Shown: positions 2,721 through 32,700, counted from the stretch's first letter. The stretch: DNA of 64,000 nt from Mytilus edulis (GCF_963676685.1 NC_092350.1:35216001-35280000); one strand, 5' to 3'. Program-made: numbers and translations. Notes: a model not told the origin generated them from the letters alone.

Positions 2721-3684
2721 AACTAGGTGCTCCGCAGGGCGCAGCTTTATACGACCCCAGTGGTTGAACCCTGAATAGTTGGGGCAAATTTGGTCACAAT
2801 ATTCAAGCTTGATTCTGTCTGAATTTGGATTGTGATCAAATTTTTGACATAATATAGGTTTTTGTCACAAAATTAATGTGGTCAAAGATCTAACAAATCC
2901 ATTGCACAATACTGTGCAATTGAAGATTTCTTCTTGAAACTTCTTTGAAAAAAAAGGAAGCCCTTCAAAAAATGGTTAACAAAAAATCCCCCAAACTTTT
3001 TGAACCCCCCTTGGAGCAATAACCCTTAAACTCAATCCCATGCTTTCCATTGCAGTATTGAACCTTGTAGTACAATTTCAGAGAGATCCATACCCTTAAA
3101 CACAAGTTATTGTCATGATTGTTTGGAAACTAGAATCATGCTTCTTTTTGGCCCTTTTTTGGCCCCTAATTCCTACATATTTTGGGCAATTAACCCAAAA
3201 CTTAATCCCAGCCTCCCCTTTGTTATATGGTACATTGTGGTACAATTTCAGAGAGATTCATACAATTACACATAAGTTATTGTCTTGAAACTAGAAAAAA
3301 GCTTGTTTTTACCCCTTTTTTGCCCTTAATTCCTAAACTTTGGCTCCATAACCCCTAAAATGAATCCAAACCTTCTACTTGTGGTTTTAAACATTGCGGT
3401 ATGATTTTAGAGCAATTGAAATACTTCTACACAAGTTATTATCCTGAAACTAGAAAAATGCTTGTTTTGGGCCCCTAATTCCTAATCAGTTGGGACCATC
3501 ATCCCCAAAATCAATCCCAACCTTCCTTTTGAGGTATTGAACTTTCTGAAAAAAATTTCATGAAGATCTATTTACTTAAACTAAAGTTATTATCCGGAAA
3601 CCAATGTGTCTTTGGACGACGACGACGCAGACCACGACATCATACCAATATACTATCCCAAAATTTTTTTGGGGTTGTATAAAA
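2721..3684 (+). mobile_element. Helentron/HINE-like non-autonomous element
   Basis: 5' box TGCTCCGCAGGGCGCAGCTTTATACGAC is shared with 7526 and 24371. Internal ~155-160-bp tandem units, (GAC)n microsatellite and a short terminal palindrome. Confidence 0.65.
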
Positions 3685-5862
3685 ATGAGTCCATAAAATC
3701 AGCTTGGAGAACGGACCTCATTTCATAATACTTTAGGAGAAAACATGTTTGTAGGTTATAAACAATTCAGTATAGCTCACGAAATTTTGTTTTTTTGTAA
3801 AACAGCCATTGATAATTACTTAACACAACCTAAGACATAAACTAAAACTTGTTTAATCAAGTTGATGAGACACACAATTCTATTTCAATTATTTTATAAG
3901 ATCTTTGTATTATGTGAAGAGAAACTGATAAGATAACTGTTCTACTACATTTGTAACTGGTTCAACTTGATATGAAAATGAATGAAAGATTCATACATGC
4001 AAATAAAAATTAAAAAAATGTCTAATACAAAATCAGACAAATTGTACATAACATTATATCACAGAAATATAAACAACCTTTTTCTACACAAACTTTTGGT
4101 TTTTCTACAGCTCCAAGAAAACTCAATTTACATCCATAATAGCACTGTTTGTTTTAAACAAAATGTAACATGAGCTACGTTTCAATAATTTAAACCCTTT
4201 CTTTTTTAGTGAAAAGTAATAAATATGCCAAACAATTTGGAAGCCCAACAAACCTTAAAGGTATGAAGCTTTGTTAAAAATATAAAGAAATCTTATATGT
4301 AGTTGCTTAGACAAATGTATTGCTGACAGATCTAAGGTAGGACTGACTCATTTGGAACAGAGTTAGTATAACATCAAAATGAGAATTATAATCAGTTTGG
4401 TTTGTATAGAGTACCATTTTGGCAGATTATAATTTTATCTTGTCAATCATTTATTATCAAATGTCAATAAAACATCTGACTGGATATTAACTATGACTAC
4501 TATTTAAAAGATGTGGGGTTAACAACAATGGCGCAGCATTACATTGTAGATGCAAGTTACAAAATCTAAACAAAACATATATTACTCAGAATTATGATAG
4601 CATAATGTCCAGTGGGAGGTTACTCGGAAGTAGAAGAAAGAATGTTAATCATCTTGTACACAACTTTGTGTTCTGTATTTATTTGCTTCATCAAGGTTTC
4701 CTTTAATTTAATAATACCTGCTGTGTTCCTACCTCAATTATGAATTTCTTTTCTTCATACAACAGTTTTATGGATGACCTTAGATGGAATTTTAAAATAT
4801 CAAGAATCTAAAATTAATACTATAAATCAGAAGAGCATAAGTTAAAGAACAAAATAAGCTAAAAATGTTGATAGGTTATGGAGCTACTGTCCAAGATGTT
4901 TGAGTTTTAAAAAATGGCGGGAAAAGGCTGACTCTAGCTTTTATCTTATATTTGCATTAATATTATTTGGGTCTCAAATCAAAAGAACCTGCTTAAATTT
5001 TGGTAATGTACCTTTTATGGGCTATTGAAGTCCTATTTGAAAAGAAAAATGGGTGTTATAGTGCAAAATATTTTACCCTGTATCGTAGGTAAAAAAAAAC
5101 ATGGAGTCTGAACATCTGACACAAATTCCTAAACCTCACCTAAAACATCCTTCAGAATCAATTGTACAGATCTATACCTATTGATATGCATACAAAGCAC
5201 TTAGTAATATCAAATATAACATATAATATAAATAAACACAGAAAAAGAGTCAAAAACACAGAAATATCAGTAAAATGACTAAAATGCAGAATTTAATGCA
5301 AAAACACAGTTAAAATTACACATTTATCATTCATAAATGCTTTCTCTTTATCTATATAATAGATAGTCTTTTTCACAAACACTTATTGCACTTTTATATT
5401 CAATCTATTTATATAATGAACAACCTTCACATTAATCAACTTTTAATCAAATGCTGCAATCACTTCTCTCCTATGAATCAATGGAATATGATTTGTATCA
5501 ATTAATGCTCGATGTTACACTTTTCTACTAAGTTTTTAGTATTACCTCTTCGTTGTAGATGTCGCAGCTACTTGCAACTAATTTTTTCAGAAGTATGCAG
5601 TTCTCAAAAAATGATCAGTTATACAAAAAATGTATTTTTCTTATTGACCTCCTCTATTATTAGTTACACCTACTTCATATTCAAAACTTTATAAATGATA
5701 TTTGTCTGGTCTGCCTTTGAAAAGGTTTTTTTAAAAGCTGCCTCTTGTTACAGTATAAACTAATGTTGGACTGTATTAATAAAACTGAAACTATGTATAT
5801 ATTCTTCCACATCTTTCCATTTTTTTCTTTCTATTTCACATTGGCTTCTACTTCTTATCAGG

Positions 5863-8800
5863 TCAATCATTTGACAGATATTTTAAAGCTTTCAGTCCAT
5901 GCTTCAGTGATAAATCTCGTTTGAATTCAGCTTTCAGCAATTTAAGACATCTGCAATTAAAAGCATAACAAAGTTTCAGCATTGTGTAGGTATATAACTT
6001 ATAAATAACATTTATATAAATACAATATAAAGATAGAAAAATTTCCAGATACCCAAACTAATTTGTTGCACATTTTGAAAACTTTGCTTTTCATCAGTGA
6101 GGCTCTAAATAAAACCTTCAAAATAGGCATGTAATTCAACTTTCTTAGTTAGTCACTATTCTGTAAGTCTGAAGTTTCTGCACTTTTTCTATCTCTGTCT
6201 AAGTTATGATATTCGCTTTGCAAAAAAATTACATTTTTTTTCAAATTATCATGATTTTTCTGGATACCTTAGATAAGGGCCAGTGGTAACTCTTGTTTGC
6301 CAGTTTCTTCAAAAACTTTTGAGAGCACTACAACCTTTTAATATATTTTTTTAAATATTTTTTTTATTCATTTTTATTGATTGTACCACTATGTCTATGT
6401 TCTATTCGTAGTCATAATTGCTATGTTTGTTGATAGGCAAAAACTTCAGATTTTGTTTTAATTCTAAACTTAATCCTTATTGTGGGTTAATGCATTTTAA
6501 ATTGCCAATTCAGTTATAATCTGTCACTTACCTTCTGTAGTTAGAACTTGATCTAAATTTAGCAATGTCAAAACTAGGAGCATGAGGCATGTGGATCATA
6601 AAAGCATTCGGTAAGACATAATACTCATATCTGTAAAAACAAATATATTTTTTAAGTCTCTAGAGCTTTTTTGTTCCTTCATTTCCAAACAAAATTAGGA
6701 AAACATAACTACAGCAATCAGGAAAAAAAACGGGAAAATTCAAAGTTATTGATTTGGTCTCAAGAAATTGTGCACCTATATATATAGCTAGCTAATTTGT
6801 CTTGCACCGGACAGATGATGAAACCGTACATGCATATGCAATAGTAAATAATGTATTTATTTATAAAATTGGTTCTCAACATAAAAACAGCCTAATAAAC
6901 AACTTTGAGGTCAGAGGTTAAGGTCACATGAAGGTGCTGATTCATGATGATATAAGACACTTAAAATAGTGCACCTTATCACTGTTCATGTCAAAATATA
7001 GAAAAGTTTGGCTTTAACAAGGTTGTATGAGAATCAAAAGAAAAAGAAATACTACTTAAACCTAGTAACAAATCATTTTTGTAGAGCGAATCTTGGATTT
7101 TTTAGGATGGAATTCCTTTACAACATACCCTAAAACATCTAACTCCATTATATGTGAGACTTTGTTCCATCCAAACCCAACAAATCTTTGGTCAAATTTT
7201 GGAATGTCTTTACCAACAACTATATAAGGTTCAAAATCATGGTTCCATTCCACCTGTAATTATAACAAGAGATAATACTACAACATAATTAATATCTGTA
7301 ATTCATTATTTCATAAAACTGGAATATTGAAGAATTTTCATAAAATAATCATTTATAGTAAAAATACATAATAGACTGACATTATGATATAGAAAAATTA
7401 TTTCTACATTGACCAGTTATATTACCTTGTAAGGTTGTGTAGAAATCCTCCATTTGGCATAATTAGTCTGTGCATGTCCTTTTGGCCACACATGAAATCT
7501 ATAAAATAAAAAGTAAATTACATGAAACCAGATGCTCCGCAGGGTGCAGCTTTATACGACCGCAGAGGTCGAACCCTGAACAGTTTAGGCATGTATGGAC
7601 ACAACATTTAAGCTTGATACAGCTCTGAATTTGGATTGTGATTAAATAGTTAACACAACATAGGTTTCTGACACAGAATGAATGTGGTCTAAGAACTTAA
7701 ACTTAAAAACCTAAAATCTTAAAAATTTTAAATTGGACATTTACCTATTATATATGGTCCAACATCCAAAATCTAAATACATGGTTAGATTCAGCATATC
7801 ATAGAACCCCAAGAATTCAATTTTTGATGAAATCAAATAATGTTCAATTTTAGACCCTTTAGACCTCAATGAGGACCAATTTGATAACTGGGCCCAAATA
7901 CTAAAAATCTAAATACATAGTTGGATTCAGCATATTGAAGAACCCCATATATTCAATTTTTGTTGAAATCAAACAAAGTTTAAATTTTTACCCTTTGGAC
8001 ATTAATGTTGGGACTAAAACTCCCAAAATCAATCTCAGCCTTCCTTTTGTGGTCATAGACCTTATGTTAAAATTTCATAGATTTCTTTTTACTTATACTA
8101 AATTTATTGTGCGAAACCCAAGAAAAATGCTTATTTTGGCCCTTGTTGGCCCCTAATTCCTAAACTGTTGGGACCAAAACACCCAAAATCAATCCCAATC
8201 TTCCTTTTATGGTCATAAACCTTGTGTTTAAATTTCATAGATTTCTATTAACTTTTACTAAAGTTAGAGTGCGAAAATCAAATGTCATCAGACGACGACA
8301 ACGACAACGACGAGGACGCCAACGTGATACCAATATACATGTACAACCAAAAAATCTCGACGGCTCAACAAAAATGAGGAAAAAAATATTCCTCTTGATG
8401 CTACTATATCTTTTGATTATAAGAAGCTTCTGTCCAATTTTGGTAAAAATCCAGGATAGATTATGAATATAATAAATGTTTAAAAAACTTTAAATGCAGA
8501 GTGTAAGTAATGTTAACAGGAAGAAAACCTGAGTCCATTTATGAGTAAAATACAGATAAACAGGAACAAAGTTTTAACAAAACTTCCTTCTAGATACTAC
8601 TTAGCTTTTGATCATAAACAAGCTCCTGTCCAAGTTTGGTACAAATCCAGGATAGTTTAAGAAAATTATTTAAATTTTTAAAACATTAAACACAGATTGA
8701 ATGTAAGTCCATTTAATGTAAAATACGGAAAAACAGGATTTTTTTAAAAATTTACTTCTGGATACTATCTTATGATCATAAACAAGCTTCTGTCCAAGTT

Positions 8801-17800: not shown

Positions 17801-20800
17801 CAATGAAACTCATTTTATGAAATACTTAAATACAATGAATTGACAGCAACCAGACTTAAATACAAGAGATTGACAGCAACCAGAATTAAATACAAAAGAT
17901 TAACAGCAACCAGATGTTTTTCATGAATATGATATTTGCTAATCTAAACCCTCAAATAGGATCAAACATAAAAAAGAAATGAATACTTGTACGGTTCATT
18001 AATGGAAAGGTCAAAATCAGTATCACTTTTCTCTACTAAAAGGTCTACAAATCAACAACGCTGAAAGCTTAAAAATGGTGAAAATCATTAATAGTGCTTT
18101 TCTTTCACATGTTTCAGGCAGTGTATGGATGCCAGATGGAAAAATAGTTTAATTGGTTCTTATCCTGAATATGCATGGATATTTGCCACAATTAAAACAC
18201 CTTAACTAATACCAAATCATTTTTCCTATGTACATGTACAAAATCACTGTTCTTTTTGCACCCATATGACTGTGCACTCTCCCCAACTAATTATGTTCCT
18301 TCAGTTTTCTAAACTGATGACTTTCAGCCAGAGCTCATACCAATGTAAAAGAAGGATAAATGTGTGTGAAAAGATATGGCTCTTTATAGACAAAGGAGTA
18401 GGTTCAGTAAGACCCCATTTTGGCCCCAAAATATAGAAGTTTTGCAAAATTGTGAAAATGTAATCCTTTAGCTATTTATTGGAAAGTAAAATGCTTCTGC
18501 TACACAAATATGGTCTGTTTTTGACAATACAATGCACATATATCGGGTACTAACATCATTAAGTCATGCTAAATTACTGAAATCTTCACAATTTTAGCAT
18601 TTTGGTTTAAATTTTAGACGGTTTCCGTCTCAAATGAAAGTGGCTGCATTCGTGTTCATGCATAATATTGAAATGTAAGTTATATTTAATGATAATACAT
18701 GACATATATAAAGGTTGAGGATGAACACGGATGTTTCACATTCATTTTTGACAAAAACCATCTGAAAAATTACGATTTTTTGCATATTTGATAGATTTTT
18801 CATATTTTTGCTTGAATCGGAGGGTTTTTAATGACTTAATCAGCTAAAATCTTTCACATACTAATTGAATCAATTGAAATAGACACTTAAGTGTTTAAAA
18901 AGTGTCCAAAATCTTTCGTTAGATGAACCTGAAATTTGAGGCCAAAATCAGCCCTTACCGGACCTACTCCTTTTGTAATTTTTGTTCAGAGATTTTTTTT
19001 TATGGATAAATGTATTCCTGTAATATACTTTTTCCTGTGTCACAGAAATAATTTCAAGTTATCAGATTCAATTAAGTTCAAGCGGATGAATAACATTTTG
19101 ACAAAATTTTACCCTAATAAGGACTAAAATCCTTACAAATTACTCATATAAATAAATGTAAATACCTTCAGGAACATTCCATGTTTCAAACAGCTGTGTC
19201 AAAATAAGTTCTGCTATATGATCTGATATAAAGTGGAAGTGGAGAGGGTTCTTTCTGTAGAACAATACACTTTTAATTAATGTGACAACACTCCTTGTGG
19301 CACTGTGTCCAGCACAAACAATGGCTATGTGTATTACCTGTAACGAATAATATCAAAGTTTCGTTGCTGATATTTCTACTCAATCTACATTATTATTTTT
19401 AGAAAGGACATAAGGAATGAAGATTATCAACTGTCCTGTACAAATCTTTCGTACAAAGTTTTATTGCATTCATATATTTTAGTGGAAAATTATTGTGTAT
19501 CACACTTCCCAATTTTATATTTCTTATTCGCATTTTGATATTTCTTGTTCAGAGTTTACCTATCTAAATAGTTTTTATTGCCCACCTACCTCACACTTGG
19601 GTATTTCCAGTTCAGCGTTAAGACATCTTATTAAAGTTTTATTGCCATTATATGTTGTACCATTCTGTACAGCAATACTCATCTGTAGGCCCATTAGTTT
19701 ATTTCTTGTTTTACTGTTATATTAAAAAGATACAATTATAGATGAAACTTATGAAAGATAAAAAAAAAAAAAAAGCTACAATTGTTTGCACCTATCCTAA
19801 GTCAGGAATCTGATGTTCAGTAGTTGTTATTTGTTGATGTGGTTAAAACATGTTTCTCTATTCTCATTTTGCATATATATTAGACCATTGGTTTTCCCAT
19901 TTGAATGGTTTTACATTTGTATTTTTTTAGGCCCTTTATGGCTTGTCTGTTTGGCGTGAGCCAAGGCTCCGTGTATATCTATTGAATTATACGTGTACTA
20001 TGGTAGCAAGATGCATAGATTTAAAGTATATAAATTACAATGAATTAATTAGTTTTTATCCTCAAAAAACAAGAATTTTTAATTATCAAACATTTAATTT
20101 GGTATAAAATGTAGTTTATTCATATTTTGAACAGAACACATAAACATGACATATTAACATGATTAACGTTTAGAAGAAAGAGGTTAGTTAGTGTTTGTGT
20201 TTAAAATTTGACAACAATACACATGAAAAATTTGTTTCATATTTTGCTTGTCAGATCATTTTATAGCCAACCATAGGGTATGGGTTTTTCTCATTGTTTA
20301 AGGCAGTACATTTGCTTATAATTACATACATTCACTTCATTTGAACTTTGGTGGATAGTTGTCTCATACATGTATGGCATAGGCAGTTTTATTTTTATAT
20401 TGTTCAAATTAACCTATTTGTGCAAGATTATAGGATTCATTGTACATGTAAGGTCCTTATTATCATTTGTACCTCAGTTGCTTCCTGAGGACTTTGTTTT
20501 CTTGATCTGCTTCTTTCAATCTCTGTGCAAGTCTGGACTCCAAAATTTGCCCAGCTTGACCGTCATATTTTGGGATTTCTATAATAAAAATGAAAATAAT
20601 AAATATGTATCATTAAGAATTTGCATTGATGTATTAGTGTTCTATGTTCACTTCATAAGTCTTCTGAAAAATTGACCTTTTGAGTAATTTATATTCATAT
20701 TTGAATTTTACAGTAAATGTATTCAATTGATAAATATGTCAATATGTTTTACCTACATTTTACATGATACACAATCATCATGATCATTACATTCCAGATC

Positions 20801-21141
20801 ATTAGTTTATGACCAAATTTATTCATTTCAATATATAACTGTAGTTGTATACTTTTCCTAGTTTTTTTATATACCATGTTGAAAATAATCAGGCAGCGGA
20901 CACAAATGAGAGATGAAGAAATCTAAAATTTATGAATAGCAAACATTTTGCGTTTGGGAAACATTTTGATACATGTAATGGCAATTTGTACAAAATCTAT
21001 TATTTGTCTTTCTAATTCACTCTACAGATAACATTGATAATTACCATCAGTAGTTAAAGCTAAGTAAACCAAAATACATGTTGGAAATGCTCCTATTATC
21101 ACTAACACAGCCAAAGTCTGCTTTCTCATTCTTATCAGCAT
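5863..21141 (-). CDS. LARGE: LARGE xylosyl- and glucuronyltransferase, 18 coding exons, ~721 aa. Exons: 21141-21045, 20578-20473, 19713-19590, 19337-19166, 17775-17741, 17463-17368, 16799-16716, 15850-15773, 14373-14242, 12951-12826, 12582-12424, 11792-11484, 10860-10705, 9999-9893, 7498-7426, 7253-7129, 6630-6532, 5950-5863
   Basis: All introns are GT-AG with consistent phases; total 2166 nt. N-terminal type II anchor [29 protein letters not shown], coiled coil ([14 protein letters not shown]), GT8 motifs ([48 protein letters not shown]) and GT49 motifs ([60 protein letters not shown]). Confidence 0.96.
7526..8962 (+). mobile_element. Composite Helentron/HINE-like elements in a LARGE intron
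   Basis: Same 5' box as 2721, internal tandem units and (GAC)n. A second repeat-bearing unit runs ~8380-8962. Confidence 0.6.
9310..9781 (+). mobile_element. HINE-like element with two ~170-bp internal repeats
   Basis: AAACAAGAATGTGTCC start, duplicated core, degenerate tetranucleotide tract and GGGGCATAAAA end. Confidence 0.55.
14424..15372. mobile_element. Non-autonomous TIR element with 8-bp TSD in a LARGE intron
   Basis: Ends GGGC...GCCC. TSD ATATTTAG at 14416-14423 and 15373-15380. Repeated TGCGCCA motifs at the left end are mirrored by TGGCGCA at the right end. Confidence 0.85.
17552..17641. repeat. Minisatellite, 21 bp x ~4
   Basis: AAATAAACTCAGAAAATGCTG repeated. Confidence 0.9.
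17827..17914. repeat. Minisatellite, 30 bp x 3
   Basis: TAAATACAA..ATTGACAGCAACCAGA repeated. Confidence 0.85.
18392..18973. mobile_element. Non-autonomous TIR element (possibly Kolobok-like)
   Basis: TIR AAAGGAGTAGGTTCAGTAAG versus CTTACCGGACCTACTCCTTT (18/20). Superfamily is tentative. Confidence 0.75.
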
Positions 21142-21695
21142 AGTGATAACCCATGGTCTCTCTCACTACATTGCATACTATTCTGAAAAATGAAGAAATA
21201 AAAATATGAAGCTTTATTAATCTTCTCCATGTTTTCTGGTCTAGATATTTCCATACTTTCATCACTTTAGAAAAAGTGAAGAAAAAAAATACAACAAACT
21301 AATGTTTCATTCTTTGGGAAGAAAACATTGTCATGATTATTGTCAGTGATTGTATCTTCAGCCTTTTCATCAGCATTCAGAGGAATTCAATAAACAAATA
21401 ACTTTGCAGAATAACCTAAACAAGTTATGTCTTGTATGTTGAAATATTCTTAAATAATTGCTTTTGTAAATTGTAAATATCATTGACATGTCCATCTTGT
21501 TCATTCAAACAGATTGAAAATGAAGTCAGGCGCGTAGCTCCCTATACGCTAACACGCAGTTGCGTGCACATCGATTCGGCATGCAAAAAAAAAAATGGCA
21601 AAATAAAAATTTATAGATTGAATGTTAAAGGAAACACCTATTTTGTCACTTTTTAAATTGATGAAATATCATTAAATAACGGCATTTGGTTTCAA

Positions 21696-21796
21696 AATAA
21701 AAGTGTTATTGGAGATTGTGACAAAATCGGACAGTAACTTGTAAAAGATACAAGTTACTGTCCGATTTTGTTATAATCTCCAATAACACTTTTATT
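21696..21796. repeat. 101-bp palindrome (48-bp arms, 5-nt loop) abutting the 18S fragment
   Basis: 21696-21743 is the reverse complement of 21749-21796 with 2 mismatches. Confidence 0.92.
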
Positions 21797-22286
21797 CGTA
21801 TATTAAAGTTGTTGCAGTTAAAAAGCTCGTAATTGGATCTCGGGTCCAGGTTGGCGGTCCGACGCCTATTGGTTACTGCCTGCTCCTGACCTACCTCCCG
21901 GTTTTTCGCCCTTGGTGCTCTTGATTGAGTGTCTCGGGTGGCCGGAACGTTTACTTTGAAAAAATTAGAGTGTTCAAAGCAGGCAATATCGCCTGAATAA
22001 TGGTGCATGGAATAATGGAATAGGACCTCGGTTCTATTTTGCTGGTTTTCGGAGCTCGAGGTAATGATTAAGAGGGACTGACGGGGGCATTCGTATTACG
22101 GTGTTAGAGGTGAAATTCTTGGATCGCCGTAAGACGAACTACTGCGAAAGCATTTGCCAAGCATGTTTTCATTAGTCAAGAACGAAAGTCAGAGGTTCGA
22201 AGACGATCAGATACCGTCGTAGCTCTGACCATAAACGATGCCAACTAGCGATCCGCCAGAGTTGCTTCAATGACTCGGCAGGCAGC
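21797..22286 (+). pseudogene. Dispersed 18S rRNA gene fragment (~490 bp, V4-V5 region)
   Basis: Contains universal 18S blocks CGTATATTAAAGTTGTTGCAGTTAAAAAGCTCGT, TTTACTTTGAAAAAATTAGAGTGTTCAAAGC, GGTGAAATTCTTGGA, GCGAAAGCATTTGCCAAG, CAAGAACGAAAG and GATCAGATACCGTCGTAG. Truncated at both ends. Confidence 0.97.
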
Positions 22287-22673
22287 ACTCAGTCTATGTA
22301 GTTTTTGGAGCACATTTTACAGTTTACGGTTCATCAGTTTGGAATGAAATGTACCAATCGGCATTAGAATTATCAGAACCCTTCGATATCGTTGAAAATA
22401 TGCCGAGGCGATGTGGTCGACAGACTACCAGAGCCAATCATCCTGCAAACACGCCAAAACAGTATTGGAAAGTCTCATTATTTTTTGCGTATGTTGAAAA
22501 CAAATGTACGATCAACAATGAACGACGACAGTTACTAGCATTACTGCATATTCATCGGCATTTCAGTGTGAATATTGACAGTTAAAGTAATAGAGAAGTT
22601 TGTTTCTGCCTAGACACGAAAAGCAGATTTTGGACAATTTTGAGTAAATTCTGTATCATAAATATGTGAATTT

Positions 22674-23034
22674 TAATGTGCGTATTGTTATGCGTTTACT
22701 TTTCTGCATTGGCTAGAGGTATAGGGGGAGGGTTGAGATCTCACAAACATGTTTAACCCGCCGCATTTTTGCGCCTGTCCCAAGTCAGGAGCCTCTGGCC
22801 TTTGTTAGTCTTGTATCATTTTAACTTTTAGTTTCTTGTGTACAATTTGGAATTTAGTATGGCGTTCATTATCACTAAACTAGTATACATTTGTTTAGGG
22901 GCCAGCTGAAGGACACCTCCGGGTGCGGGAATTTCTCGTTGCATTGAAGACCTGTTGGTGACCTTCTGCTGTTGTCTGCTCTGTGGTCGGGTTGTTGTCT
23001 CTTTGGCACATTCCCAATTTCCATTCTCAATTTT
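22674..23034. repeat. Unclassified ~360-bp interspersed repeat, copy 1 (nested in the hAT element)
   Basis: Highly similar to 52044-52403 (TAATGTGCGTATTGTTATGCG...CCATTCTCAATTTT). A partial inverted copy is at ~63435-63570. Confidence 0.85.
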
Positions 23035-24370
23035 GTTGTTTATGTATTACTCTATTCAGAAGATTTATTAATAGTTTTACATTCATAATTTTTTTATAAG
23101 TCCTATCTACAGATAACTCCTCTTTTAACCGTCCTATGACCGAAAACCGAAAAAGAAAACATTTTTCTGCATAAAAAGGTCCCAAAAATTTTTCGCCTCG
23201 CTCCGCTCGGCAGAATTTGCTTGCACATGGTTTCTATCTAGCTACGCCCCTGGAAGTATAACATGTATAATAGAGTTTTCTCAAACAAAATAATGTGTCA
23301 TGCTTGTTGAAGTAATATTTGGACATTTTTTATTCAGAAACCTTTCACAAGTTAAAATTTTGAACTTAATTTGATTTTGATGGATAAAGATTACATTAAT
23401 TTATAAATGTGTTTTAAACATTCAACATGTGTGTACCATTGATGATCAATTAACAATTTACTTTATTAGCATGATTAGCATGTTTTCTTTTTCTTTTTTT
23501 CTTTGTTATAGATTATTAATAGATAAATAAGCTTTTAATTACTATTAAATGAATGAACTGCCCTGGTTGACCTGAGGTAATTTGAGGAAAACATGATATT
23601 GGACATTTAGACCTAACATGCCTAAAGACCTTTGCTTTGTGACATCATTCATTTTCTTTTACGAAAAATGCATTAATTTGATAATTATGTTCATATGTAC
23701 ATGTAAAGCAAAATTTTGTCATCTGCACCAAGACAATCATAAAAATATTTCATAACTACAATATATGTACCATAAAATATTGTCCATATCTATGAAAAAA
23801 ATTCCAGAGAAGGACACAGTTTCATTGTGAAATTTGGTTTTTATATAGACAATATTTCACAGATTAATACTTAGTAAAATGTATGAAATTTTGTCCTGTT
23901 AAAGGGAGGTAATATTTCATTGTATTGAGACAATATTTCATAGACAGATTATCATGAATTTTGTATCATGAAGGAGAGGTTACAACATATATATGAATTT
24001 GGATAATGATCAATGATGATATCATTAAAATAGTTTATTTGATTGATAATAACAAATAAACACAAATTAATAATAGATGCAGGTATAAACAGAACAGTAT
24101 TTTTGCTCATCGATGGATGGCAAGGATACAAAACACTTTTCGAATATCACCGTCATAAAGTTGTAACGTAGGGCATTTCTGAAAATCAGAACAGTTTTCA
24201 GAAGAAAGGCAAATTCATTTTGTTTACAAAATATTGAAATGTATTCTAAATGTTTTGACAAGAAAAAGTGATGTCACAAAAACCCCTTGTATTAAGTTGT
24301 AATTCATGAAGATAAACTTGAAAAAGTACTGCATACTTGCTTTACAAAATAATTTCAGTAATATAAATCT

Positions 24371-26827
24371 AACCAGATGCTCCACAGGGTGCAGCTTTAT
24401 ACGACCGCAGAGGTCGAACCCTGAACGGTTGGGTCAAGTATGGACACAACATTCAAGCTGGATACAGCTCTGAATTTGGATTGTGATTAAATACTTGACA
24501 CAGCATAGGTTTCTGACACAGAATGAATGTTGTCTAATGAACTCAAATTTTTTTTTTGCTTTTGAGCAATTCACTATGCTGTTAAATATTAATCCTCTCA
24601 AAAAAAAATGTTTGAAGAAATTTTCTTTTTAATTTATCTGAACTGAGAAAAATTGAACCCCCCCTCCCCCAATTTTTTTGTTCACCTCCCCCTTCCCCTT
24701 ATTCCAAAAATGATCTCAATTCAAATTTCTAATGGAGTTTACAACAATAACTACTCATTTAAATACATCATAAAGTATTTAAATAAAAAATGTCATACAG
24801 CCATGGTTAAAATTAATATTAATTAATAGTAACTTCTAAAAAAATAAATGGGGAATATGTCCAAAGGGACACAGATGATGCCTCTGCTAGCATATAATGT
24901 TATAAAGGGACATAGCTCAAGAACTGTAAAAGTGAAGCTGCCAAAAATTGAACTTAAAACTTGTAAAGGAGCATAACCCTAGAATAATAATCAAAGTGCT
25001 TGTAATCACTAAATGGTAAAGATTGCTTTAATTTATCAGTTGGTAGTAAAAGTGAATATTGCACTGTATATTGTATATATAGCATTGATTTAAGTTGATT
25101 CAGCTATTATTCTTGACAAAGAAAGATAACTCCAATTTTCAAAGATTTCATAAAGCATTGGTTTAAGTTGTCATAACTTCATCTTTAACTTACATTTTTA
25201 ACAGAATAATAGATACAAGTACATTTCCCTGTGTTTTAAAGAATGCAAGAGTAACCCCTGTTTTTAAAGCTGGTGAAAAATTCATGGCAACAAATTATAG
25301 ACCAATTTCTGTACTTCCAGTTTTATCAAAACTTTTAGAAAAGCATGTTTCAAAACATTTGTTTGACTATCTTAAAAGATTAGATCTTTTACACCCAGCA
25401 CAGTCTGGGTTTCGACAAGAACACTCTTGCCAAACTGCCCTTATCAATATCATAGATAAATGGATACAGGATATGAATGATGGTAATATCAACTTAGCAG
25501 TCCTGTTGGATTTTAAGAAAGCTTTTGATGTAGTAGATCATGATATCCTCTGTAAAAAACTTGAAATTTATGGATTTGATAATACTGCTGTTTCTTTTTT
25601 TCAATCGTATTTGAATGAAAGAACTCAACAAGTACAAATTGGTAATGCTCATTCTGAAAAACTTCATATCAAGTATGGTGTTCCCCAAGGCTCCATATTA
25701 GGCCCCCTTCTGTTTATATTATACATCAACGACCTTCCTATTTATATGAAAAATTGTTGCACTGATTTATATGCCGATGATTCAACCTTACATCTTTCTG
25801 GTAATTGTTATCAAACTCTTCAGTCAAAGGTACAAGAAGATTTACATGGTGTAGAGGCATGGTGCAATGATAACAATATGTTCATCAATAAAAATAAAAC
25901 AAAATATATGATTATTGGAACGAAGCAAAGAGCAATGCCACATTACAATGAGAGTTGTTTAACTATTAACAATCAAGTGATACAATCTTCCACATGCGAA
26001 AGTCTTTTAGGCATTAAAATTGACCCTTCCCTCACATGGACAACCCAAATTGACTTGATCTGCTCAAAAATATCATCTAGACTATATCTACTATTAAAGA
26101 TTAAAAAATTTCTAAATCTAGACTGCAGAAAATTATTCTATAATGGTTATATCTTGCCACTTATTGATTATTGTTGTATAGTGTGGAGTAGTTGTAGCAG
26201 TGAGGGTTTAAAAAGGATATTAAAATTACAAAAGAGGGCTGCTAGATTAATACTAGAAACAGACCCATTCGCTCCTTCTGCACCCTTATTCAAACACTTA
26301 AACTGGATGACAGTTGAACAGAGAATAAAATATCATAAGTTAGTGATGACATTTAAGTGTATTAATAATGATGCCCCATCATATCTTACTAACAAGTTTC
26401 ATTATGTTTCAGACAGAAATCCGTACCCCTTGAGAAATGCTGTTCAAGGAAACCTCATACTCCCTAAACCAAAAACAGAATTATTCAAAAAATCTTTTAT
26501 GTATTCTGGACCATACTTGTGGAATAATTTGCCAATACAGTTAAGAAATATTACAAATATTAATTCTTTCAAATACAAAATAGCAGATCATTTATTGAAA
26601 TCAACCTAACTGTATAAATAATATAAAAAACTGATCATGTCATCATGTTTATTTTTTCATCACATTTTATCAAGTTGTATTGAACATTATTATCACACTT
26701 GACTTTTTATGCTAATGTATGTATGCAATGTACTAGTATATGTTTGTGTTTTGTTTGATTTTTCATTACGAGGGCCTCAGGGAAGATTAGTTATATAGCT
26801 AACTGTGTAACCCTCTTAAAATAAAGT

Positions 26828-29112: not shown

Positions 29113-29784
29113 ATAATATTGCACAAAAATTTTGTGCAATGCAAGATAAAATGTTTTTCGTCTTCTATATGTATTGCATATGTAATTTTGTCCCTTAGAT
29201 TATTACACATAAACAAATGTGAAACTTGTACTGATGCTACAGAAGGGAAATGGTATAGAGAATTAATATTTTAGAACCTAGAAAATGTTTCGCTCGAACT
29301 GTCGAATAACAAAATCAAAAATTTCAAATGTGATTCATTTTGCAAAAAAAAACGTATAAAGAAGAACTTTGCAGATACAAATATATTCTACTGTACATAG
29401 TGGCTTCAATTTTGTAGGATTAGATTACAGTTTCAATACCTTTATAAAACCTATGTGTTCATTATGAAAAATTATAGATAACTTTTTTTCAATGTATTTT
29501 CAACTGGACCTTCTTTCTGAGATTTATGGCAAAGGAGAAGGAAAACAACAAACAGGTAACCAGTAAAAAGAAAATCACCAATCACCAAAAAAAAAGACGA
29601 AACGGTTATAGTTTTTTACCGTCTATAAACACAGCTGTCATTCTCTTTTATAGATGCTTTCTATTTTTATAACAATTCGTTTACCTTACAGTTGATGCCA
29701 AGACATTGAAAATTTAACATTTTTTTAATAAAAAGATCATACTTTTTGGTATTCAGATTCATTTTGCCAATATTTGTGTTGACC

Positions 29785-32700
29785 ATGGCCTCAGCTGCAT
29801 CAGATTTTGTGAGAGAAGTATGGGAACGCTATCAGAAGATAGTGAGGGAAAATCCCGAAACTGTCAGTCAACTAGAATCCACATTCAAAGTTGTGTCATA
29901 TGTTATAGCAGGTAAAATATCTTGTTAATGAAGAATGTTTACAAGAAATCTTAAAAAGGGGTGGATAACTCAGATTTTAATCCTACTTTCAGTTTCATAT
30001 GATCAACAAAATCCTCTTTGATAGGCAACATCATGCATACATAATTTATTTAATGGTTTATTCTTCTCATATATATCATCTTAAAAATAGGGATGAAACA
30101 ATACTCTTATTGAATGATTCTGCTTTTTTTTTAAACAAGCCAAAGGTCATGGTTCAGATTTTATCATTGTTACATTTCTTGGTTTCCAACTTTAAAGTCA
30201 TCTGAAACGAGTGATTTAATCAGATTGGTGAAAATTAATATTTATCCAATTCTTGAACCCATGCATGTATATATCATCAACTTAGTCATGTTAGTCTTCT
30301 GTGCTAGTCCAAATAATTATGACGTCTTGAAAGGCTATTATAATTTTTTTCTTTGACGCCTTCCTTCGGCGTCAGAGAAAAAAATTAGAATAGCCTTTCA
30401 AGACGTCATAATTATTTGGACTACTTCTGTGCATGATTTTATCATTTATACAAATGACATTATGTATCGTATAATTGTCATTTTTTTTCTCTCTGTTTGT
30501 TATGATGTGAAAATATAGCTGCTCATTACTTGTCGTTTTTGAAGCCAAAGTTTACCGATTGTCACCTTATAGTAAACAATCAACAAAGAAGCATGGATAA
30601 TGGAAACATGTTTAACATGTACAATAAGATAATAGTTTATTTCAGTGACAGATCCATGCGTATTGCCATCACCTGATTTTTATGAGGGGTCACTCTAAGG
30701 TCACTTTGCATATGGAAAATAGACCTACAATCATATTTTAACCCCCACAAACAAAAAATATCTTATAAGTCACATTCATCATGTTCGTAGGATGATCCTG
30801 GAACCATTGAAACTGTTTTTGAACTAAGATCAATTATTTTACATGCATTAATTGTGAGGGCTTTAAAAAGAAACAGTAGAAAGATAATTTTACCAACATA
30901 AAAAATACTGGAACAACAACCACTGGCGGATCTAGAAATTTCATAAGTGGGGGCACACTGACTGCCTAAGAGGGGGCTTGCTATTGTCATGCTTCAGTGA
31001 TTCACTATATAAGCAACCAATTTTTTTCCAAAAAAGGGGGGAGGGCCCCTCTCTTAATCGGCTGAATTGAAGTGTAAGTTGGTGTGGTCCAAATCTGATA
31101 GTTGCTACTGGGCAACCTTTCTTTTTGGGGGACTTTTACATAATAAATGCATGTATGTATGGAATCAGATATGTGTATGTATGAACATTTGATGAATGAA
31201 AAGAGACAGACACTTAAAATGCCAAATAGAACAATAAAAAGTCACCTAAATGTGATTAGGTTAAAAATAGTCATTTATGATCTCTTTCATGTCTTTTATA
31301 CATTTTTAACCAATTAAGTCTTTTTGTCTTTCAGGTAGATTTGAAGATTCCCAGGTTTTGTCAGAGCTTGTCTACTTGGCATCCAATTTACTGATTTTAC
31401 TAAATGATACCATCTTCAGACAGACAGCCAAAGTTTTAAAAAACATAGTAAGTCTGTCAAATTTATATTCAACATGTACATTTGTATTTATATTAATGTT
31501 TAAAGTTGAAGCTAATAGTAATACTGAATTTGAACAAGCAATTAAAATCTGTGATGTCAAAGTAATACATTTTATCTTCAATAACCAATGAAAGTATCAC
31601 AAACCAGAGCAAAACATGCTGTCCACTCTGGGCTTCCAACTAAACAATTAATCGAATATAATTTTTTATACTGGTATTTATCATTTAGTCAAATTGTAAC
31701 TAACTACTTCATCAAGATTTTAGAAGTAAGTTGTGGTTGGTCGTCATAGTTGAATACTGAGAAGTAGCGAATAACATCCTAGTCTTATAGGCCAAATAAA
31801 AAAAGATGTGGTTTTCTTATTACCCTACCCTCCATATTTTTAAGCTAAAGAAATAGCTTACCCTTAAGTTGTTGTTTTTTTCCATTTTTTTAATACGCAC
31901 TGTTCAGAATGCCTCTCCTTTAGACTCAATGTAAAAACAAATGGTAAAATAAAAAAAAAAATCCCTACCTACATGACCTATAGCTATCTTCCCTATTTTT
32001 ATTAAAGATGCAATATGAAACACACATACCATTTTTTTTGGCCAGATTGAGAAAAAAAAATAATTTTGGACAGATATTGGATGTATAAATCTGAGTCAAA
32101 CAGTGTCATATGTTTACAACTTTCAAGTTTATGCAAAGTAAATGACTGACTTTTGTAAATGCTAAACTATTAAATCAATGTTTTACATGTACAAGTATGC
32201 TCTTTCTTATTTCAGTCTGTTCCAGTAGAAAGATGGAAAAGATTTTTAACAGTTTTACAGTATGCAGAAGTTTTTCTAGAGATGGCAGCACAGAGAGCAT
32301 GGGGAGAAACAGGAAGATGGTTCATTATATTAGTTGTACAGCTCACAAAGTAAACAGGCAATCTCTCTACTCATTTTTCGGCTTTATGTAGATATATATA
32401 TAGAATGACCAAATTTCCATAGAAAAAAGTAGTATGGCCTGGTATGTTAAAACTTTGATATGAAAAGTGACATAATTGGTATATATTGTAATTGCCCCTT
32501 ACCATGCAATAATAGTAAACTTATTCAAGCCTTTCAGAATAATATTAATTTTATTGATGTCACTTTGAGCTAGGTAAAGCTCTTGAATATTAATTTGACT
32601 ACTAGTATTTGACAGTTAGATTTTTTGCATTAAATGTAAAAATTTTAAAGCCCCATTGTTATATTTTACAACAAAATTGAACAATGTTATTAAAATACTG

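What the first reader, a model, noticed from the sequence alone, without database searches (positions are those of the whole stretch)
21522..23257. hAT-derived transposon carrying captured 18S rDNA
Seen: 13-bp TIRs and an exact 5-bp TSD (GAAGT) enclose, in order, a 101-bp hairpin, ~490 bp of 18S rDNA, an internally deleted hAT transposase remnant and a nested 360-bp repeat. The 18S piece sits where most of the transposase should be. Known: elements that insert into rDNA (Pokey, R2) and rRNA-derived SINE heads exist. Inference: here rDNA appears to be cargo of a cut-and-paste element, which could disperse 18S fragments genome-wide. One copy cannot show whether capture happened before or after insertion.
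Basis: partly seen in the sequence, partly recalled or inferred. Interest (0 to 1): 0.85.

Follow-up and report, generated by a model that had tools for sequence, protein, structure and literature searches.

The report
One-off 18S filler inside a hAT5 transposon
One copy of a common, defective cut-and-paste transposon has had 490 bases of the animal's own 18S ribosomal gene and a small inverted duplication patched into it, apparently during repair of a DNA break. No other copy in the genome carries this piece, so it is a repair scar and not ribosomal DNA being spread around.

Summary
There is a 13-bp TIR pair (12/13 matched), an exact 5-bp TSD, a 101-nt hairpin, 490 bp of 18S (21797-22286), hAT transposase remnants and a nested 365-bp repeat.

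The element belongs to a non-autonomous family with hundreds of candidate copies. Six sibling copies each have a different 5-bp TSD. A 3.5-kb autonomous relative encodes a DUF4371 + hAT-dimerisation transposase, which fits the hAT5 type with 5-bp TSDs.

- About 35 distinct sibling copies were inspected and all lack 18S.
- All three rearrangement junctions occur once in the 1.37-Gb assembly.

Compared with the family consensus, this copy lost 26 bp. In their place it gained a 53-nt inverted copy of its own adjacent sequence, joined at a native 6-bp palindrome, plus the 18S piece. This is a complex templated (filler-DNA) insertion of the kind made by error-prone break or gap repair.

The 18S piece differs from the rDNA units by 7 transitions (1.43%). 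That equals this copy's private divergence (1.44%), so it is an old, real insertion and not a misassembly.

Whether the chimera moved once as a unit cannot be told. The result is ordinary, though neat.

The parts
21522..21526 (.). left target-site duplication GAAGT
   Evidence: The right-hand copy is at 23253-23257. Siblings have other 5-bp TSDs.
21527..21539 (+). left terminal inverted repeat CAGGCGCGTAGCT
   Evidence: I14. Conserved in all aligned siblings.
21527..21743 (+). native left body of the non-autonomous hAT5-type element, ending in the left half (CTTGTA) of a small native palindrome
   Evidence: 95-98% identical to >=39 other loci; alignment A1.
21744..21796 (-). copy-specific inverted duplication: reverse complement of family sequence AATAAAAG...CTTGTATCTTT, giving the flipped loop AAAGA and the right hairpin arm
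   Evidence: Alignment A1. Siblings read CTTGTA-TCTTT-TACAAG-ATTTGAATTTGTAAT here. The junction word is unique in the assembly.
21797..22286 (+). 490-bp sense-strand fragment of the genome's own 18S rDNA (about Rfam model positions 606-1095), now a pseudogene piece
   Evidence: 98.6% identical to 23 rDNA units; the 7 differences are all transitions. Both junction words are unique.
22287..22668 (+). native internal body with two hAT transposase remnants (22337-22486, roughly codons 453-503 by my own coordinate arithmetic; 22493-22668, the last ~50 codons including the end of the hAT dimerisation domain, plus 3' UTR)
22669..23033 (.). nested 365-bp interspersed repeat with a probable AATTTT duplication at its edges; present only in a subfamily of the element
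   Evidence: >=6,099 candidates, full-length copies 96-98% identical.
23034..23252 (+). native right subterminal region and right TIR (23240-23252, AGCTACGCCCCTG)
23253..23257 (.). right target-site duplication GAAGT

Best explanation
A non-autonomous, internally deleted hAT element of the 5-bp-TSD (hAT5) type sits in unique chromosomal DNA. In this one copy, a break or stalled synthesis occurred at a small native palindrome (CTTGTA-TCTTT-TACAAG). It was repaired by error-prone, synthesis-dependent repair with template switches. 26 bp were lost. 53 nt of the element's own adjacent sequence were copied in inverted orientation, joined through the 6-bp palindromic microhomology. Then 490 nt of 18S rDNA were copied or captured as filler, with blunt joins on both sides. 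Abortive gap repair after transposon excision, Pol-theta/alt-EJ and replication template switching would all give this product. The result is a single chimeric copy that has been decaying neutrally since. It is a repair scar, not a family that spreads rDNA. Shown: the structure, its uniqueness and its age. Inferred: the pathway and the order of the steps.
For: (1) The siblings give the undisturbed site, and this copy differs from it by exactly a 26-bp loss, a 53-nt inverted copy with a flipped loop, and 490 bp of 18S. (2) No other copy has 18S, and the three junctions are unique in 1.37 Gb. (3) The family is a real transposon: 6/6 siblings have different 5-bp TSDs. The autonomous relative L073:3232-6732 has the same TIRs, the TSD ACATT and a 674-aa ORF with PF14291 + PF05699. 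hAT5 elements are documented to make 5-bp TSDs (PMC9004415). (4) It is not an artefact: the 18S piece has 7 transitions against all 23 rDNA units compared, and the only 100% match found among the scored hits in the assembly is the piece itself. (5) Age: 7/490 = 1.43% in the 18S against 17/1183 = 1.44% private substitutions in the element body. (6) Short homology patches lie between the element and the uncopied 18S flanks (8-mer P = 0.006; 9-mer in register P = 0.00015). These argue for templated copying rather than random ligation. (7) Local fold-back inversions of 2-150 bp primed at short inverted microhomology, combined with distant templated insertions in complex events, are documented products of break repair (PMC11724301). 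Interrupted gap repair and filler DNA in hAT elements are known (PMC3014272).
Against: The 18S junctions were not checked with reads. The two 18S junctions show no microhomology, and the 11- and 13-nt non-matching tails next to the homology patches were retained; no standard model predicts that. Only about 35 distinct copies, out of the 40 scored per search from about 680 candidates, were inspected copy by copy; the rest are covered only by the junction-word scans. The equal ages of the 18S piece and the copy also fit capture before the copy landed here.
Confidence: 0.8

Rival explanations
1. The capture happened at a donor site, and the chimeric element then transposed here as a unit (18S as true cargo, moved at least once), without leaving other surviving copies.
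For: TIRs, subterminal regions and a perfect 5-bp TSD are intact. The 18S piece (1.43%) is as old as the copy's own lineage (1.44%), so capture was not much later than the copy's birth.
Against: No second copy or donor exists in the assembly. Equal ages are also expected if gap repair hit this copy in place while the family was active. With 7 substitutions, the capture age has a wide margin, roughly 0.4 to 2 times the copy's age.
Confidence: 0.2
2. The filler was copied from 18S rRNA itself (RNA-templated repair or a captured cDNA), not from rDNA.
For: The fragment lies wholly inside mature 18S. rRNA is the most abundant cellular RNA (general knowledge). The in-register 9-nt patch next to the right junction would let the right-hand break end pair with a sense-strand 18S template, which could be RNA.
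Against: No poly-A, no TSD around the 18S piece and no other RT hallmark. rDNA offers the same sense strand. If synthesis ran from the left end, the template must have been antisense, that is DNA. Nothing here separates the two.
Confidence: 0.15
3. Assembly artefact: a chimeric read or collapse placed rDNA sequence inside a transposon copy.
For: rDNA is high-copy and mostly sits on small unplaced contigs. The 18S junctions were not checked with reads.
Against: The piece differs from every rDNA unit compared by the same 7 transitions and has no indels. A chimera would be identical to its source. It comes with an ordered 26-bp deletion and a 53-nt inverted duplication whose arms have since diverged at 2 sites. 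The flanks are single-copy. A contig of run X16 crosses from the flank 27 nt into the TIR with 0 differences over 442 nt.
Confidence: 0.03
4. An rDNA-targeting element (Pokey/R2-like) or an rRNA-derived SINE.
For: Association of a mobile element with 18S sequence.
Against: The element sits in unique DNA on a chromosome-scale contig, not in an rDNA unit. The rDNA units match only the 490-bp piece, not the element. There is only one copy, with no LINE-like tail.
Confidence: 0.01

Closest known systems
hAT5-type hAT transposons (5-bp TSD) and their internally deleted non-autonomous derivatives
   Same: Short TIRs starting CAGG. 5-bp TSDs in 7/7 family copies and in the autonomous relative. The autonomous relative encodes a transposase with DUF4371 and the hAT C-terminal dimerisation domain (PMC9004415).
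   Different: Placement within the hAT5 clade was not tested by phylogeny. The window copy has only about 100 codons of transposase left.
Abortive gap repair / filler DNA in cut-and-paste elements (Ac/Ds and P elements from general knowledge; hobo-type hATs in Anolis, PMC3014272)
   Same: An internal rearrangement with foreign filler at a deletion point, with the termini kept intact.
   Different: In Anolis the filler-bearing forms amplified into families. Here the filler form is a single copy, and the filler is rDNA.
Fold-back inversions plus distant templated insertions at double-strand breaks (PMC11724301)
   Same: A local inverted copy primed at a short inverted microhomology next to the break, a second fragment from a distant locus, a small deletion, and blunt or near-blunt outer joins.
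   Different: Those are yeast experimental events, and most are under 14 bp. Here the inverted copy is 53 nt, the distant piece is 490 nt, and the event is a fixed or segregating germline allele of an animal. The loop orientation requires a same-polarity template (sister chromatid, displaced D-loop strand or other copy), or final joining of two 3' ends through the palindrome. A simple self snap-back does not explain it.
Transduplicating elements (Pack-MULE type) and rDNA-associated mobile elements (Pokey, R2, rRNA-headed SINEs)
   Same: Host sequence, here rRNA gene sequence, lies inside or next to a mobile element.
   Different: There are no multiple copies sharing the captured piece, no insertion into rDNA and no retrotransposition features.

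Membership tests
hAT superfamily | Transposase with the hAT C-terminal dimerisation domain (PF05699) | tested here: met
   Met in autonomous relatives L073, L074 and L075 (E 5e-9 to 4e-10, above cut-off, plus PF14291). The window remnant aligns to that ORF at 78-88% DNA identity. On its own it gives no Pfam hit.
hAT superfamily | Short TIRs with a CAG/TAG-type terminus | tested here: met
   CAGGCGCGTAGCT / CAGGGGCGTAGCT, conserved across copies.
hAT superfamily (classical) | 8-bp target-site duplication | tested here: not met
   5-bp TSDs in the window copy, six siblings and L073.
hAT5 group | 5-bp target-site duplication | tested here: met
   GAAGT, AGATC, TTGAA, ATTAC, TATTT, TCATT and ACATT. 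The definition is from PMC9004415.
hAT5 group | Transposase clusters with named hAT5 transposases | not tested
   No reference hAT5 proteins were compared.
Cargo-carrying (transduplicating) transposon family | Several copies share the same captured piece and junctions but have different TSDs | tested here: not met
   Junctions are unique in the assembly. About 35 distinct siblings were inspected and none has 18S.
rDNA-specific elements (Pokey, R2) | Element inserted at a specific site within rDNA units | tested here: not met
   The locus has single-copy flanks on contig C7. rDNA units match only the 490-bp piece.
Complex templated insertion from break repair | Local inverted copy joined at a short inverted microhomology, plus a distant templated fragment, plus a small deletion at one site | tested here: met
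   6-bp CTTGTA/TACAAG, 53-nt inverted copy, 490-bp 18S piece, 26-bp loss.
Complex templated insertion from break repair | The pathway and enzyme that made it (gap repair after excision, Pol theta, replication switch) | not testable with these tools
   The sequence product is compatible with all three.

The most novel reading that the evidence does not exclude
The 18S piece was copied directly from ribosomal RNA by a break end that paired with it through a 9-nt patch. That would make this locus a natural germline footprint of RNA-templated break repair in an animal. Separately, the chimera with its intact ends may still be mobilisable, in which case it would be the first step toward an rDNA-carrying hAT.
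Probability: 0.12. Interest if true: 0.55.

Novelty: new member of a known kind. Interest (0 to 1): 0.22.

Why it matters
This finding removes a tempting but unsupported claim that a DNA transposon is spreading 18S fragments through the genome. What remains is a well-resolved natural example of a complex repair scar: a deletion, a fold-back-type inverted copy and a distant templated filler. The undisturbed state is known from hundreds of sibling copies, which is rarely possible for germline events in animals. It also documents an abundant hAT5-type family, with 5-bp TSDs and autonomous and deleted forms, in this genome. The short homology patches beside the filler hint at how a repair template gets chosen. 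Practically, it warns annotators that isolated 18S hits on chromosomes can be filler pseudogenes.

Tried and rejected
**Tried without result**
- Pfam on the two remnant ORFs (78 and 48 aa) gave nothing. hAT identity was established through autonomous relatives instead.
- I looked for an alternative haplotig with an empty site. Both flanks are single-copy in the assembly, so there is none.
- The literature search for "18S rDNA fragment + transposable element + captured" returned only cytogenetic papers. No precedent for 18S inside a hAT was found or excluded.

**Reads**
- I laid contigs of four runs on 20300-21796 only, leaving out every 18S letter on purpose.
- The two 18S junctions are therefore untested by reads.
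- The "opposite strands" joints at 21699/21793 and 21704/21787 are alignment ambiguity of the palindrome, not evidence.
- Depth over the element is swamped by other family copies.

**Models rejected**
- A simple self snap-back of the left end is rejected because it predicts loop TCTTT, while the copy has AAAGA.
- LINE-mediated retro-insertion of rRNA is rejected as stated, because there is no poly-A and no TSD around the piece.

Full report
**What is there**

The window is AT-rich (about 31% G+C) eukaryotic DNA. It comes from a 1.37-Gb assembly (contig C7).
- TIRs at 21527-21539 and 23240-23252, 12/13 complementary (I14).
- The TSD GAAGT on both sides.
- A 48+5+48-nt hairpin at 21696-21796 (I1), with a DNA fold of -48 kcal/mol and z = -17.
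- An Rfam eukaryotic SSU match at 21805-22334, 313 bits, model positions 606-1116.
- BLAST to the genome's own rDNA units bounds the 18S piece exactly at 21797-22286, 490 bp.

**The element is a real transposon of the hAT5 type**

- The left 217 nt match at least 39 other loci at 93-98% identity, out of 681 candidates. The internal part gives 641 candidates.
- Six siblings, aligned at both ends, keep the same termini. They carry six different 5-bp duplications: AGATC, TTGAA, ATTAC, TATTT and TCATT, plus GAAGT here.
- A protein search with the 78-aa remnant found long open frames elsewhere.
- Three of these frames (674, 611 and 701 aa) carry Pfam DUF4371 (PF14291) and the hAT dimerisation domain (PF05699) above cut-off.
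- One of them, L073:3232-6732, is a 3.5-kb element with the same TIRs and the 5-bp TSD ACATT.
- The window's 22337-22486 and 22493-22668 align to that ORF at 78-88% DNA identity. So "internally deleted hAT remnant" is correct, although the remnant alone gives no Pfam hit.
- hATs classically make 8-bp TSDs. The hAT5 group is the documented exception with 5 bp (PMC9004415).

**The nested repeat**

Most family copies run directly from 22668 to 23034. So 22669-23033 is an insertion carried only by a subfamily (the window copy and L002-L007). It is an abundant 365-bp interspersed repeat with at least 6,099 candidates.

**The 18S piece is private to this copy**

- Every sibling goes from the left body across about 26 nt straight to the sequence that follows the 18S piece here.
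- The family consensus reads ...GGACAGTAA-CTTGTA-TCTTT-TACAAG-ATTTGAATTTGTAAT-ACTCAG....
- The window reads ...GGACAGTAA-CTTGTA, then AAAGA-TACAAG-TTACTGTCC...CTTTTATT, then 490 bp of 18S, then ACTCAG....
- The second segment is the exact reverse complement of the family sequence AATAAAAG...CTTGTA-TCTTT, which explains the flipped loop.
- So this copy lost 26 bp and gained a 53-nt inverted copy of its own neighbourhood plus the 18S piece. Only the left hairpin arm is native.
- Queries of 106 nt across either 18S junction match end to end only at the window itself.
- Junction words of 22-29 nt for all three junctions occur once in the assembly at up to 2 mismatches.

**It is not an artefact, and it is old**

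- The piece differs from each of 23 rDNA units by the same 7 substitutions, with no gaps.
- All 7 are transitions, and two are at CpG.
- No scored match elsewhere in the assembly is 100% identical to it, so no source for a chimera was seen.
- The rate of 7/490 = 1.43% equals the private-substitution rate of this copy's transposon body, 17/1183 = 1.44% against its subfamily.
- The two hairpin arms have since diverged at 2 sites.
- So the event is roughly as old as the copy's own lineage. With only 7 events the margin is wide, about 0.4 to 2 times the copy's age. That is why capture before, during or after arrival at this locus cannot be resolved.

**Mechanism (inferred)**

The inverted copy joins the native sequence within the 6-bp palindrome CTTGTA/TACAAG. 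A plain self snap-back of the left end would keep the loop TCTTT, so it is excluded. Two routes give the observed loop AAAGA:
- A 3' end ...CTTGTA primes on TACAAG of a same-polarity strand. That strand could be a sister chromatid, the displaced strand of a D-loop during gap repair after excision, or the other template at a fork.
- A strand synthesised from the right-hand end finishes in ...TACAAG-3' and is joined to the left end's ...CTTGTA-3' by microhomology.

The two 18S junctions are blunt. However, the parts of 18S just outside the retained piece share an 8-mer (CTCCAATA) and a 9-mer (AGTTTTTGG) with the element sequence beside the junctions. The right-hand patch is in register to within 1 nt. 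In shuffles, P = 0.006, 0.002 and 0.00015 respectively. This argues that 18S was used as a paired template and not ligated in as a random fragment. The retained 11- and 13-nt non-matching tails remain unexplained (note 2).

Fold-back inversions of 2-150 bp at short inverted microhomologies, and complex events that add a distant templated fragment, are established products of break repair (PMC11724301). Interrupted gap repair and filler DNA in hAT elements are also established (PMC3014272). Whether the template was rDNA or rRNA cannot be told from the product.

**Reads**

Four runs kept as contigs were laid on 20300-21796. The 18S junctions are therefore untested by reads.
- Run X16 has a contig matching 21112-21553 with no differences. 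It crosses from the flank 27 nt into the TIR, just under the 31 letters the tool asks for to count as bridging.
- In run X1 (same organism label, another study) and run X6 (another organism label), contigs match the flank up to exactly 21526. They then continue for 666 and 405 nt with sequence unlike the element.
- The simplest reading is an empty site in those samples, meaning an insertion polymorphism. The right flank was not in the stretch, so this is only suggestive.

**Surroundings**

- Both flanks are single-copy.
- The element lies in a TE-rich stretch.
- An ORF at 29746-29928 looks like a PEX16 N-terminus to my eye, and a 441-aa ORF at 25284-26609 looks like a reverse transcriptase. 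Neither was tested.

**Verdict**

The "cargo that disperses rDNA" part is not supported. This is a one-off filler-DNA repair scar in one copy of a hAT5-type non-autonomous family. It is a new instance of a known kind and of modest interest.

Noticed in passing
window 21777-21784 and 22300-22308 (with L008:1491-1498 and 2005-2013): The element shares an 8-mer and a 9-mer with the 18S sequence lying just outside the captured 490 bp. The right one is in register to within 1 nt (shuffle P = 0.006 and 0.00015). This suggests homology-assisted choice of the repair template. The retained non-matching tails are unexplained.
   Followed up: partly
L073:3232-6732 and L074 (about 3430-6883): Apparently intact autonomous hAT5-type elements (674- and 611-aa ORFs, PF14291 + PF05699). 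Both also carry a 147-175-bp piece of the same 365-bp interspersed repeat, but at a different internal site, between the equivalents of window 21595 and 21650.
   Followed up: partly
L005:667-1781 (G000:C6:20124506-20125620): A sibling copy holds a head-to-tail triplication of a ~271-bp internal segment (equivalent to window 22308-22587). This is another internal rearrangement in the same family.
   Followed up: no
L044, L047, L048, L049, L057-L059; L051: The family forms a deletion series. Several copies keep ~270 bp more between the equivalents of 22490 and 22489. L051 keeps ~1.06 kb more between 22407 and 22448, containing an internal direct duplication (two near-identical 56-58-aa ORFs).
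   Followed up: no
window 25284-26609 (+): A 441-aa open frame that reads like a reverse transcriptase (contains YADD), probably a non-LTR retrotransposon fragment. Not run against Pfam.
   Followed up: no
window 20300-20400: Contig depth about 4,000 times that of the neighbouring unique sequence in all four runs laid, so a very high-copy repeat ends near 20367-20400.
   Followed up: no
window 21526/21527: Contigs of runs X1 and X6 match the left flank up to exactly 21526 and then continue with unlike sequence for 666 and 405 nt. This is probably an empty-site allele, meaning the transposon insertion itself is polymorphic or lineage-specific.
   Followed up: partly
G000:C8:9889-10379 and 24206-24696; many small contigs: rDNA units (18S spaced about 13.5-17 kb apart) sit mostly on small unplaced contigs. 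Two units lie at the very start of chromosome-scale contig C8, a likely NOR at a chromosome end.
   Followed up: no
window 29746-29928 (+) and 21047-21265 (-): Short ORFs that may be first exons of the head-to-head genes noted by another reader (PEX16-like N-terminus at 29746). The transposon would then lie in the shared upstream region.
   Followed up: no
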